Assembly: GCF_001194135.2 (NCBI RefSeq)
Contig: NC_068997.1
Location: 27,660,801-27,724,344, forward strand
DNA: 63,544 bases
Reading direction: 5' to 3'
Source of the DNA: Octopus bimaculoides
Taxonomy: Eukaryota
The notes beneath the pieces are model-generated. The model was given only the letters and a program-made list of their open reading frames with translations, was not told the origin of the DNA and made no database searches. Position 1 is the first letter of the stretch; the number at the start of each line of letters is the position of its first letter. Both the position numbers and the translations under genes were made by a program. Positions 47,838 to 48,214 of this stretch are shown piece by piece.

Positions 47838-48214
47838 CAAAAATAAGAGGAATGACCAGCAAAAGTGGACTCCTATATGCTAGAAATAGATGCTGAATCA
47901 TCTAACCACGAAAAAAATGTATGTTCTCAGTAAAAATTCAGCGACACAACAGATTGGAAATTGCATTGCGAATCGGCGGACTACGCTGACGATCCTGCAG
48001 ATATTTACCTATGTAAATTTTTAACAGGTGAAACCATGGTACGTAGGTTAATCGTTTTTTTTATTTAGTATTTTTTCATTTGTCTTGCTCTTTTATAATC
48101 TGTTGTGTCGCTGAATTTTTACTGAGAACATACATTTTTTTCGTGGTTAGATGATTCGGCATCTATTTCTAGCATATAGGAGTCCACTTTTGCTGGTCAT
48201 TCCTCTTATTTTTG
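47838..48214. repeat. 118-bp inverted repeats (47838-47955 / 48097-48214) flanking a 141-bp hammerhead-containing core
   Basis: The arms match at 117/118 positions by eye; TA on both flanks. Confidence 0.9.
47981..48046 (+). ncRNA. Type I hammerhead ribozyme motif (minimal, palindromic stem III)
   Basis: CUACG-CUGACGA-U-CCUG[27 nt]CAGG-U-GAAA-CCAUGG-UA/CGUAG. Stem I is 5 bp perfect and the core CUGANGA/GAAA/UH is intact. Confidence 0.8.

What the first reader, a model, noticed from the sequence alone, without database searches (positions are those of the whole stretch)
47981..48046. Complete minimal hammerhead ribozyme hidden in the centre of a young long-inverted-repeat element
Seen: every hammerhead element is present in order on the + strand. 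Stem I is CUACG/CGUAG, the core is CUGACGA, and stem II is CCUG/CAGG extended by an inner ATTTAC/GTAAAT hairpin. GAAA follows, and the cleavage triplet is GUA (cut predicted after 48041). Stem III (ACCAUGGU) is a perfect palindrome with no loop. Known: such palindromic stem III is typical of minimal hammerheads of Penelope-like elements and retrozymes, which are proposed to cleave as dimers. Inference: this is a recently mobile, self-cleaving non-autonomous retroelement ~2.4 kb downstream of MRPS10. Caveat: the pair closing stem II (10.1/11.1) is U-U rather than the usual purine-pyrimidine.
Basis: partly seen in the sequence, partly recalled or inferred. Interest (0 to 1): 0.85.

Follow-up and report, generated by a model that had tools for sequence, protein, structure and literature searches.

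The report
Hammerhead motif in young octopus retroelement
A complete hammerhead-ribozyme-like motif really does sit inside a recently inserted 471-bp mobile element of the Octopus bimaculoides genome, and the element looks like an ordinary Penelope-like/retrozyme-type insertion, a known kind of ribozyme-carrying retroelement, with the ribozyme probably weak or inactive at this locus.

Summary
The motif is present exactly as described at 47981-48046 (+): helix I, CUGACGA, a long helix II, GAAA, the palindrome ACCAUGGU and a GUA site. It is rarer than chance. I expect 0.003-0.03 per window, and 0 of 539 scrambled-core decoys match at the settings taken from the motif itself.

The window is Octopus bimaculoides. 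The 471-bp block 47838-48308 is absent from the orthologous O. vulgaris site and is flanked by a 10-16-bp target duplication in a (TA)n tract. Its 121-nt arms differ at one base, so it is a young insertion.

Its anatomy matches published Penelope-like-element (PLE) insertions: an AT-rich target, two inverted 5'-truncated copies, and a one-sided tail. The hammerhead lies in sense in the longer copy.

An independent 248-bp insert in O. vulgaris, absent from O. sinensis, carries a cleaner minimal hammerhead in the same layout.

Weak points:
- No other copy of the family could be reached.
- There is no PLE ORF in the window.
- The conserved G10.1-C11.1 pair is replaced by U-U.
- In its own RNA context the hammerhead fold is 6-9 kcal/mol worse than alternatives.
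- There is no tandem partner, so it is not a retrozyme array.

Verdict: a new member of a known kind. Self-cleavage is unproven and probably poor at this locus.

The parts
47822..47837 (.). Left copy of the target-site duplication TATATATCTATATATA. Its inner 3-6 nt may belong to the arm, so the TSD is 10-16 bp.
   Evidence: Identical 16-mer at 48309-48324. O. vulgaris has a single uninterrupted (TA)n here.
47835..47955 (-). Left arm. Read as the shorter, inverted, 5'-truncated copy of the unit, with its 3' end facing outward at about 47835-47838.
   Evidence: Reverse complement of 48097-48217 with 1 mismatch in 121 nt.
47956..48096 (+). Unique central region. Read as the 5' part of the longer (+) copy. 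It holds a 25-nt leader, the hammerhead motif and 50 nt more.
   Evidence: The two halves show no complementarity. There is no other copy in the window.
47981..47985 (+). Helix I, 5' strand (CUACG).
   Evidence: Pairs with 48042-48046.
47986..47992 (+). Catalytic core box C3-A9 (CUGACGA).
47993..48029 (+). Helix II. U47993 and U48029 are opposed (10.1/11.1 mismatch). Then CCUG/CAGG (4 bp), an internal loop, and the AUUUAC/GUAAAU hairpin (6 bp, loop CUAU).
   Evidence: In context the inner hairpin has pairing probability about 0.7 and the outer 4 bp about 0.18.
48030..48033 (+). Core box G12-A15.1 (GAAA).
48033..48040 (+). Helix III strand ACCAUGGU, a perfect 8-nt palindrome with no loop. It can only form fully between two copies (double hammerhead).
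   Evidence: The MFE dimer of the 66-mer uses it as an 8-bp intermolecular helix.
48041..48046 (+). A17 (48041), the predicted scissile bond between 48041 and 48042, and the helix I 3' strand CGUAG (48042-48046).
48097..48217 (+). Right arm, the 3' part of the longer (+) copy.
48218..48308 (+). One-sided AT-rich tail of 91 nt (88 nt if counted from 48221), present only at the right end. It ends in AATAAATTT directly before the TSD.
   Evidence: Absent from the left end and from O. vulgaris. The cross-species alignment resumes exactly at 48309.
48309..48324 (.). Right copy of the target-site duplication TATATATCTATATATA.

Best explanation
The 471-bp block 47838-48308 is a young retrotransposition product specific to the O. 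bimaculoides lineage. It is of the Penelope-like-element (PLE) type, either a short hammerhead-bearing non-autonomous unit (a retrozyme 'monomer') or a severely 5'-truncated PLE end. The hammerhead motif is the ribozyme module that such RNAs carry, not a chance look-alike.

Shown:
- It is an insertion into a (TA)n tract inside a SINE, with a 10-16-bp target duplication.
- It consists of two inverted copies of the same sequence with their 3' ends outward: a short copy of 121 nt and a long copy of about 262 nt, plus a 91-nt tail on one side only.
- The complete type-I hammerhead motif lies in sense orientation in the long copy. It starts 25 nt from that copy's 5' end, and its cut site is 176 nt from the copy's 3' end.

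Inferred from published PLE biochemistry and genomics:
- A GIY-YIG/RT protein cut both strands of AT-rich DNA and primed cDNA synthesis on both. This gave the inverted pair.
- The two cDNAs started at different internal sites of the RNA. This gave the one-sided tail.

Inferred for the ribozyme:
- In the source RNA, two hammerhead copies pair through the palindrome ACCAUGGU into a double hammerhead and cut after A17. The two copies could come from a tandem source locus or from two transcripts, and PLE protein may assist.
- At this locus the motif is most likely a passenger with little or no activity. There is no tandem partner, U-U replaces the conserved G10.1-C11.1 pair, and flanking sequence out-competes helix I.
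- The arms are about 99% identical, so the U-U was probably already in the source RNA rather than a later mutation.
For: (1) The motif is non-random. There is 1 hit against 0.003-0.03 expected from shuffles, and 0 of 539 scrambled-core decoys hit on the real sequence.

(2) Independent octopus example. The same untuned scan finds a textbook minimal hammerhead in O. vulgaris: L002 18061->18017, CACACG CUGAUGA UGGGU-CAAU-AUCCA GAAA CUCGAG UC CGUGUG. It lies in a 248-bp insert with a 12-bp TSD that is absent from O. sinensis. So small hammerhead-bearing retroposons were mobile very recently in this genus. Their layout is the same as here: leader 36 vs 25 nt, and cut site to 3' end 173 vs 176 nt.

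(3) Insertion and youth.
- The window is O. bimaculoides CM046617.1.
- Alignment to O. vulgaris and O. sinensis stops at about 47787 and resumes at exactly 48309.
- The insert-removed sequence aligns straight through the O. vulgaris site.
- The arms have 1 mismatch in 121 nt, while the flanks are 83-86% identical between species.

(4) The anatomy matches published PLE features.
- Craig et al. describe high 5' truncation, an adjacent inverted 5'-truncated copy forming inverted repeats, a tail at one end only, and a (TA)n target bias (PMC8557442).
- Frangieh et al. show a PLE protein that cleaves and extends both DNA strands, prefers AT-rich DNA, and has two internal RT start sites that explain the tail (PMC11167929).

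(5) The motif has traits of PLE minimal hammerheads: a 5-bp helix I, a long helix II, and palindromic 15.2-16.2 with no loop 3 (PMC4209133).

(6) The isolated 66-mer dimerises in silico into the classic double hammerhead, at -32.6 kcal/mol against 2 x -11.1 for two monomers.

(7) PLEs are recently active in Octopus: 31 families and 336 young insertions in O. vulgaris (PMC13282606).

(8) A second hammerhead-like motif in the window (58535->58494, minus strand) also sits in a palindromic insert within a TA-rich tract.
Against: - No second copy of this element was found in the window, in 100 kb of other cephalopod loci, or in the metagenome, prokaryote and viral collections. There is therefore no conservation or covariation test and no demonstrated link to a PLE ORF.
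- No PLE RT/GIY-YIG ORF lies in the window. The only RT fragment (49816-50548) is LINE-like.
- The G10.1-C11.1 pair, described as highly conserved in PLE minimal hammerheads, is replaced by U-U.
- The tail is 88-91 nt, whereas 30-40 nt is reported for PLEs.
- The element shares no sequence with the O. vulgaris hammerhead unit outside the core.
- The fold of the 66-mer is not better than shuffles (z = -0.73).
- In the unit RNA the hammerhead is 6-8.6 kcal/mol above the MFE with P(helix I) near 0. The O. vulgaris unit is only 1.8 kcal/mol above its MFE with P = 0.6.
- Rfam hammerhead models do not score it. They also miss the O. vulgaris one, so this point is uninformative.
Confidence: 0.6

Rival explanations
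1. Chance look-alike. The inverted-repeat block is some other mobile or foldback element, for example a long-TIR MITE, and the hammerhead-like string in its unique centre arose by coincidence and has no ribozyme ancestry.
For: - Relaxed minimal hammerhead descriptors are known to give false positives (PMC6155905).
- The motif only passes if a mismatch is allowed at the base of helix II.
- At loose settings decoy cores do hit the window, at 0.024 per decoy.
- The fold is not better than shuffles, and the hammerhead fold is strongly disfavoured in context.
- No family copies were found to show conservation.
- Mutator-type elements with long TIRs are active in Octopus.
Against: - The expected number of chance hits is only 0.003-0.03 per window, and no decoy core matches at this strictness.
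- The motif falls inside a 471-bp insert that covers 0.7% of the window and has just the anatomy expected of hammerhead-carrying PLE-type insertions.
- It has an unrequested perfect 8-nt helix III palindrome, as in the O. vulgaris hammerhead.
- The right arm is not terminal. About 90 nt separate it from the TSD, which does not fit a TIR transposon.
Confidence: 0.2
2. Active retrozyme. The locus is transcribed, the hammerhead self-cleaves by pairing with a second transcript, and the RNA circularises and serves as a transposition intermediate.
For: - The unit size (262-353 nt) and low GC (about 35%) fit metazoan non-LTR retrozymes (PMC7229834).
- Retrozyme monomers are common, and retrozymes are derived from PLE ends (bioRxiv 10.64898/2026.07.22.740005).
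- The dimer fold is favourable for the isolated motif.
Against: - There is no tandem repeat and only one hammerhead at the locus.
- Monomers are thought unable to transpose, and single minimal hammerheads showed no activity in vitro.
- U-U lies at 10.1/11.1, and helix I probability is near 0 in context.
- If the whole insert is transcribed, the 121-bp arms would fold into a long hairpin.
Confidence: 0.1
3. The functional unit is the long hairpin, not the ribozyme. A transcript through the insert forms a 121-bp near-perfect dsRNA stem that acts as an endo-siRNA precursor or ADAR-editing substrate, and the hammerhead-like loop is incidental.
For: The arms have 1 mismatch in 121 nt. The insert lies in the same orientation as MRPS10, 2.3 kb downstream of it, so read-through transcription is conceivable.
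Against: The near-identity of the arms is explained by youth alone, since the insert is absent from O. vulgaris. No expression data are available. This reading does not explain the hammerhead motif, the tail or the TSD.
Confidence: 0.07

Closest known systems
Minimal type-I hammerheads of Penelope-like elements (Cervera & de la Pena 2014, PMC4209133)
   Same: - Type-I order of the parts.
- Short helix I (5 bp) and a long helix II.
- No real helix III or loop 3; instead a palindrome at 15.x-16.x that implies dimeric action.
- Occurrence as a dispersed single motif in a truncated element.
   Different: - The highly conserved G10.1-C11.1 pair is replaced by opposed U/U.
- Helix II is interrupted by an internal loop.
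- No PLE ORF or pLTR could be linked to it.
- No family alignment is available.
PLE-type insertion architecture (Craig et al. 2021, PMC8557442; Frangieh et al. 2024, PMC11167929)
   Same: - AT-rich/(TA)n target.
- Inverted 5'-truncated copy next to the main copy, forming inverted repeats.
- An extension ('tail') at one end only.
- The hammerhead lies upstream of the 3' end, in sense.
   Different: - The tail is about 90 nt instead of 30-40 nt.
- The whole insert is only 471 bp, with no coding sequence.
- There is no ORF downstream of the hammerhead, unlike the anole PLE, where the ORF starts inside the ribozyme.
Metazoan non-LTR retrozymes (Cervera & de la Pena 2020, PMC7229834; Li et al. 2026 preprint)
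   Same: - Unit of about 260-350 nt and low GC.
- Type-I hammerhead with a palindromic helix III.
- TSD longer than 4 bp.
- Monomeric derivatives are known.
   Different: - Not tandem; there is a single hammerhead.
- It has an inverted partial copy.
- There is no evidence of circular RNA.
O. vulgaris 248-bp hammerhead-bearing insert found here (L002 18097->17850)
   Same: - Same genus, and a recent insertion with a 12-bp TSD in AT-rich DNA.
- The hammerhead sits near the 5' end (leader 36 vs 25 nt).
- Cut site to 3' end is 173 vs 176 nt.
- A 6-nt palindrome lies between GAAA and UH.
- A U follows A9 in both.
   Different: - No sequence similarity outside the core.
- The O. vulgaris motif has a U-A pair at 10.1/11.1, a GUC site and a 6-bp helix I.
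- It is thermodynamically competitive in its own RNA.
- It has no inverted copy.

Membership tests
Hammerhead ribozyme (type I) | Conserved core boxes CUGANGA and GAAA and a UH cleavage site, in type-I order | tested here: met
   CUGACGA at 47986-47992, GAAA at 48030-48033, and U16.1-A17 at 48040-48041.
Hammerhead ribozyme (type I) | Three helices around the core | tested here: inconclusive
   Helix I has 5 bp and helix II has 4+6 bp. As a monomer, helix III is at most 2 bp; it reaches 8 bp only in a dimer. In the unit RNA, helix I has a probability near 0.
Hammerhead ribozyme (type I) | G10.1-C11.1 pair closing helix II | tested here: not met
   U47993 is opposed to U48029. The pair is described as highly conserved.
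Hammerhead ribozyme (type I) | Score against curated covariance models (Rfam hammerhead families) | tested here: inconclusive
   There is no hit at gathering threshold or at E<=10. The clean O. vulgaris minimal hammerhead is missed too, so the models do not cover this subtype.
Hammerhead ribozyme (type I) | Conservation and covariation across homologous copies | tested here: inconclusive
   No homologous copy could be retrieved.
Hammerhead ribozyme (type I) | Site-specific self-cleavage | not testable with these tools
   This needs in vitro transcription or RNA end mapping.
PLE minimal hammerhead | Short helix I (4-5 bp), long helix II, palindromic 15.2-16.2 without loop 3 | tested here: met
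   Helix I is 5 bp, helix II is 4+6 bp, and helix III is ACCAUGGU.
PLE minimal hammerhead | Extra unpaired nucleotide between A9 and 10.1, followed by G10.1-C11.1 | tested here: not met
   A U follows A9, but a U also precedes G12, and the next pair is C-G rather than G-C.
PLE minimal hammerhead | Located in the pseudo-LTR of an element encoding RT plus a GIY-YIG endonuclease | tested here: inconclusive
   There is no PLE ORF in the window; the only RT fragment is LINE-like. The genome-wide link could not be tested.
PLE-type insertion | AT-rich/(TA)n target, inverted 5'-truncated copy, one-sided tail | tested here: met
   The (TA)n target and TSD are shown, the inverted pair, and the tail on the right side only. 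The tail is about 90 nt, against the 30-40 nt reported.
Metazoan non-LTR retrozyme | Tandem repeats (at least a dimer) of a unit that each carry a hammerhead | tested here: not met
   No tandem repeat covers the region, and there is one hammerhead at the locus.
Metazoan non-LTR retrozyme | Expressed as small circular RNA | not testable with these tools
   No transcriptome access.
MITE / foldback DNA transposon | Terminal inverted repeats flush with a short TSD at both ends | tested here: not met
   The right arm ends at 48217-48220 but the duplicated target starts at 48309. The sequences directly flanking the arms match at only 6 of 9 positions in a TA-rich tract, which is not a clean duplication.

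The most novel reading that the evidence does not exclude
The inverted repeat and the ribozyme form one designed unit. This would be a foldback retroelement whose transcript is a 121-bp hairpin with a hammerhead in its loop. Cleavage in the loop, in trans-dimers, would open the hairpin into a two-stranded dsRNA with defined ends, or would control whether the RNA is seen as an RNAi/ADAR substrate. The second palindromic, hammerhead-like insert at 58461-58613 would be another member. Nothing here excludes this reading, but the PLE twin-priming model explains the same anatomy without it.
Probability: 0.04. Interest if true: 0.7.

Novelty: new member of a known kind. Interest (0 to 1): 0.33.

Why it matters
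If the reading holds, octopus genomes carry recently mobile, hammerhead-bearing short retroelements of the PLE/retrozyme kind. My full-text search for 'hammerhead ribozyme' with 'octopus' returned no paper describing such elements in Octopus. The two insertion-polymorphic examples, one in the O. bimaculoides lineage and one in O. vulgaris but not O. sinensis, give clean before-and-after sites for studying how such elements integrate. They show twin priming, a one-sided tail and an AT-rich target. The U-U variant at the base of helix II in a very young copy offers a natural test of how much of the canonical core these protein-assisted, dimeric ribozymes need. There is also a practical point. 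Rfam hammerhead models miss this minimal subtype entirely, so genome annotation pipelines will not report it. None of this changes what is known about the class.

Tried and rejected
- Rfam cmscan found no hammerhead hit, either at gathering threshold on the whole window or at E<=10 on 551 nt around the motif. I do not count this as evidence against, because the clean O. vulgaris minimal hammerhead is also missed.
- I searched for other copies in several ways. BLAST of the element against the window found only self hits. Exact 22-26-mers and a gapped hammerhead pattern found nothing in the metagenome, prokaryote-genome and viral collections. A concatenated pseudo-protein of the element's short ORFs found nothing in the 5.8-billion protein set.
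- I used the LINE-like RT fragment (49852-50349) to harvest more octopus loci. It gave only 3 weak hits, so that was a wasted protein search.
- Three more loci were fetched: L004, an unidentified ENA contig carrying an MRPS10 homologue; L005, Argonauta; and L006, an ENA contig of unknown organism. They hold no hammerhead-like motif and no homologue of any of the three inserts.
- The O. bimaculoides unit was aligned to the O. vulgaris hammerhead unit. The score is no better than for shuffles, so I rejected the idea that they are one family.
- There is no ORF through or downstream of the hammerhead. I therefore rejected an anole-PLE-like arrangement in which the PLE ORF starts inside the ribozyme.
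- I considered whether the central region is a degenerate continuation of the inverted repeat and rejected it; about 2 of 11 positions are complementary.
- I considered a Helitron and rejected it, because there is no TC...CTRR terminus and a TSD is present. I also rejected a retrozyme array, because there is no tandem repeat.

Full report
**1. The observation**

The sequence at 47981-48046 (+) reads CUACG CUGACGA U CCUG-CAGAU-AUUUAC-CUAU-GUAAAU-UUUUAA-CAGG U GAAA CCAUGG UA CGUAG.
- helix I, 5 bp
- the C3-A9 box
- helix II, 4 bp plus an inner 6-bp hairpin
- G12-A15.1
- an 8-nt palindrome ACCAUGGU in place of helix III and loop 3
- a GUA triplet, with the predicted cut between 48041 and 48042

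The long inverted repeat is real. The repeat finder gives arms 47832-47960 and 48092-48220. A base-by-base comparison shows one mismatch in the 121-nt core, 47835-47955 against 48097-48217. The centre shows no complementarity.

**2. Is the motif more than chance?**

I wrote a type-I descriptor: helix I, CUGANGA, helix II with at most one opposed mismatch at its base, GAAA, helix III read as pairs inward from A15.1-U16.1, UH, and helix I.

- At the strictness of this motif the window gives 1 hit. Three hundred dinucleotide shuffles give a mean of 0.003. At looser settings the shuffle mean is 0.03.
- Shuffles lack the hairpins of real DNA, so I also scanned the real sequence with 539 decoys in which the core letters are permuted. 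No decoy hits at the strict settings, and decoys average 0.024 hits at the loose settings.
- The strict settings were fixed after seeing the motif. The honest chance level is therefore 0.3-3% per window, low but not negligible.
- The 66-mer alone does not fold better than shuffles (z = -0.73).
- Rfam finds no hammerhead at gathering threshold or at E<=10.

**3. An unplanned control**

The same scan, not tuned to it, finds a textbook minimal hammerhead in the O. vulgaris locus fetched for comparison. It lies on the L002 minus strand at 18061->18017: CACACG CUGAUGA UGGGU-CAAU-AUCCA GAAA CUCGAG UC CGUGUG. No decoy hits that locus at the strict settings.

Rfam misses this one too. The Rfam negative for the finding therefore says nothing, because the models do not cover hammerheads without a loop 3.

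This O. vulgaris motif lies in a 248-bp block that is absent from the O. sinensis orthologue. The block is flanked by a 12-bp duplication, TCTTGTATTTTT. Small hammerhead-bearing retroposons were therefore mobile very recently in Octopus.

**4. Where the window comes from, and what the inverted-repeat block is**

The ORF 44944-45573 is a single-exon MRPS10. The exact protein maps to O. bimaculoides GCA_001194135.2, chromosome CM046617.1. The orthologues in O. vulgaris (L002) and O. sinensis (L003) were fetched with 10-kb flanks.

- The intergenic DNA aligns at 83-87% identity up to window position about 47787 and resumes at exactly 48309.
- At that place O. vulgaris has an uninterrupted SINE-internal (TA)n tract.
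- After removing 47838-48308 and one copy of the 16-mer TATATATCTATATATA, the O. bimaculoides sequence aligns straight through the O. vulgaris site at 80% identity.

So 47838-48308 (471 bp) is one insertion on the O. bimaculoides lineage, with a 10-16-bp target duplication. The range reflects the arms reaching 3-6 nt into the TA-rich repeat.

The flanks differ by about 15% between the species, which split 13-33 Mya (PMC13282606). The arms differ by 0.8%. If the arms were identical at insertion, the event is of the order of 1-2 My old. This rests on a single mismatch, so the upper bound is several-fold higher. By the same rate only about 0.3 substitutions are expected in the 66-nt motif since insertion. 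The U-U was therefore most likely already present in the template RNA (inference).

**5. Anatomy and the best-fitting known mechanism**

From left to right the insert contains:
- a 121-nt arm
- a 141-nt unique centre that starts 25 nt upstream of helix I
- the same arm inverted
- about 90 nt of AT-rich tail that has no counterpart on the left

The right arm is thus not terminal, which does not fit a TIR transposon or MITE.

Published descriptions of Penelope-like elements fit point for point:
- Insertions are heavily 5'-truncated and often have an inverted 5'-truncated copy directly adjacent, forming inverted repeats. They carry a tail at one end only and favour (TA)n (PMC8557442).
- A purified PLE protein cleaves and extends both strands of AT-rich DNA. 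It starts reverse transcription at two internal RNA sites, and the distance between those sites is the tail (PMC11167929).

Read this way, the left arm is a short cDNA copy on the minus strand, with its 3' end at the left TSD. The region 47956-48217 is the longer plus-strand copy, which carries the hammerhead in sense. The tail reflects a more 3' start site for that copy.

The O. vulgaris insert has the same layout without the inverted partner: leader 36 vs 25 nt, and cut site to 3' end 173 vs 176 nt. The two share no sequence outside the core, so they are different families.

PLEs are recently active in O. vulgaris, with 31 families and 336 young insertions. Animal retrozymes, including frequent monomeric copies, have been tied to PLE ends (preprint 10.64898/2026.07.22.740005).

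**6. Would it cleave?**

As a monomer, helix III can form at most 2 bp. Single minimal hammerheads were inactive in vitro and dimers only weakly active (PMC4209133). The anole PLE hammerhead cleaved only with protein.

- In silico, two isolated 66-mers fold into the classic double hammerhead: an intermolecular 8-bp helix III and swapped helix I strands, at -32.6 kcal/mol against 2 x -11.1 for monomers.
- In the 131-nt centre, structures containing the hammerhead are 11 kcal/mol above the MFE.
- In the presumed unit RNA they are 6.0-8.6 kcal/mol above the MFE, and helix I has a probability near 0. The O. vulgaris unit is only 1.8 kcal/mol above its MFE, with helix I probability 0.6.
- The locus has one copy only and no tandem repeat.

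Together with the U-U at a position described as highly conserved, I judge the motif genuine in ancestry but probably weak or dead here. Established hammerhead biochemistry says that 10.1/11.1 changes reduce activity. I did not retrieve numbers, and I mark this as background knowledge.

**7. What could not be done**

No second copy of the element was reachable:
- BLAST of the element against the window found only self hits.
- Exact-pattern scans of the metagenome, prokaryote and viral collections found nothing.
- A pseudo-protein query built from the element's ORFs found nothing.
- Three more cephalopod-related loci held no copy.

There is therefore no conservation or covariation test and no direct link to a PLE ORF. 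The window has only a LINE-like RT fragment. These gaps hold my confidence at about 0.6.

**8. Comparison and verdict**

- It fails one defining feature of that hammerhead class, G10.1-C11.1.
- It fails the defining tandem arrangement of retrozymes.
- It meets the features of PLE-type insertion architecture, except for tail length and the absence of coding sequence.

I file it as a new member of a known kind: a young, short, hammerhead-bearing PLE-type insertion in octopus.

Confidence in each reading:

| Reading | Confidence |
|---|---|
| Young PLE-type insertion carrying a genuine hammerhead module | 0.60 |
| Chance look-alike | about 0.20 |
| Active retrozyme | about 0.10 |
| Hairpin-RNA function | about 0.07 |

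Interest is modest. The class is well known. The value lies in clean insertion-polymorphic examples in a cephalopod, a natural core variant, and the note that Rfam misses the subtype.

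Noticed in passing
window 58494-58535 (minus strand), inside 58461-58613: A second hammerhead-like motif: AGCUGC CUGAUGA ACA-GGAA-UGU GAAA CUCUGAG UA GCAGUU. It lies in a roughly 150-bp near-palindromic insert centred on CAGCUG, within TA-rich microsatellite. In context it is swallowed by a 23-bp perfect hairpin (-53.5 kcal/mol), and Rfam scores the region only as a generic miRNA-like hairpin. 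It may be another twin-primed hammerhead-element insertion truncated at the ribozyme, or a chance hit (about 1-2% per window).
   Followed up: partly
L002 (O. vulgaris OX597830.1 locus) 17850-18097, minus strand; empty site at L003 about 17727-17738: A 248-bp insertion with a 12-bp TSD (TCTTGTATTTTT), present in O. vulgaris and absent from O. sinensis. It carries a textbook minimal type-I hammerhead (GUC site, 6-bp helix I, CUCGAG palindrome) 36 nt from its 5' end. This is evidence of very recent mobility of hammerhead-bearing short retroposons in Octopus.
   Followed up: yes
L002 17850-18250 and window 47800-48350: Rfam 15 hammerhead covariance models give no hit even at E<=10 for either octopus minimal hammerhead, which has no loop 3. 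Standard annotation will therefore not report this subtype.
   Followed up: yes
L002 about 14128-14870 and L003 about 13848-14725, orthologous to window about 47787: In O. vulgaris and O. sinensis, a tandem array of four to five units of about 170-185 bp is inserted in the same SINE, a few tens of bases from the site used by the O. bimaculoides insert. The units resemble window 46661-46891. It is an independent lineage-specific event, which suggests a locally insertion-prone spot.
   Followed up: partly
window 49816-50548 (+): Degenerate reverse-transcriptase fragment (Pfam RVT_1 below threshold, with a YMDN motif). It looks LINE-like rather than PLE-like. It lies 1.5 kb downstream of the insert, and nothing links the two.
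   Followed up: partly
window 6828-7178 (-): ORF whose translation contains a ...DPDFMKTIVTGDGTWV... stretch, which I recognise from memory as reminiscent of mariner-type transposases. Not searched.
   Followed up: no
window 16290-16540 and 16821-16916: Tandem repeats of 66/132 nt and 47 nt containing GTGCCGGTGGCACGTAAAAAGCAC-like units. They are probably multimerised SINE heads.
   Followed up: no
window 44944-45573 (+): MRPS10 is encoded by a single uninterrupted ORF of 209 aa, 88% identical to O. vulgaris, with the gene called as one block in all three Octopus assemblies. It may be intronless. Whether it is a retrogene was not examined.
   Followed up: no
window, e.g. about 51.4-51.9 kb, 57.28-58.07 kb, about 61.2-61.6 kb, about 32.6-32.9 kb: The window contains 1994 N in several assembly gaps, mostly next to microsatellites. 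Repeat content near them is therefore incomplete.
   Followed up: no
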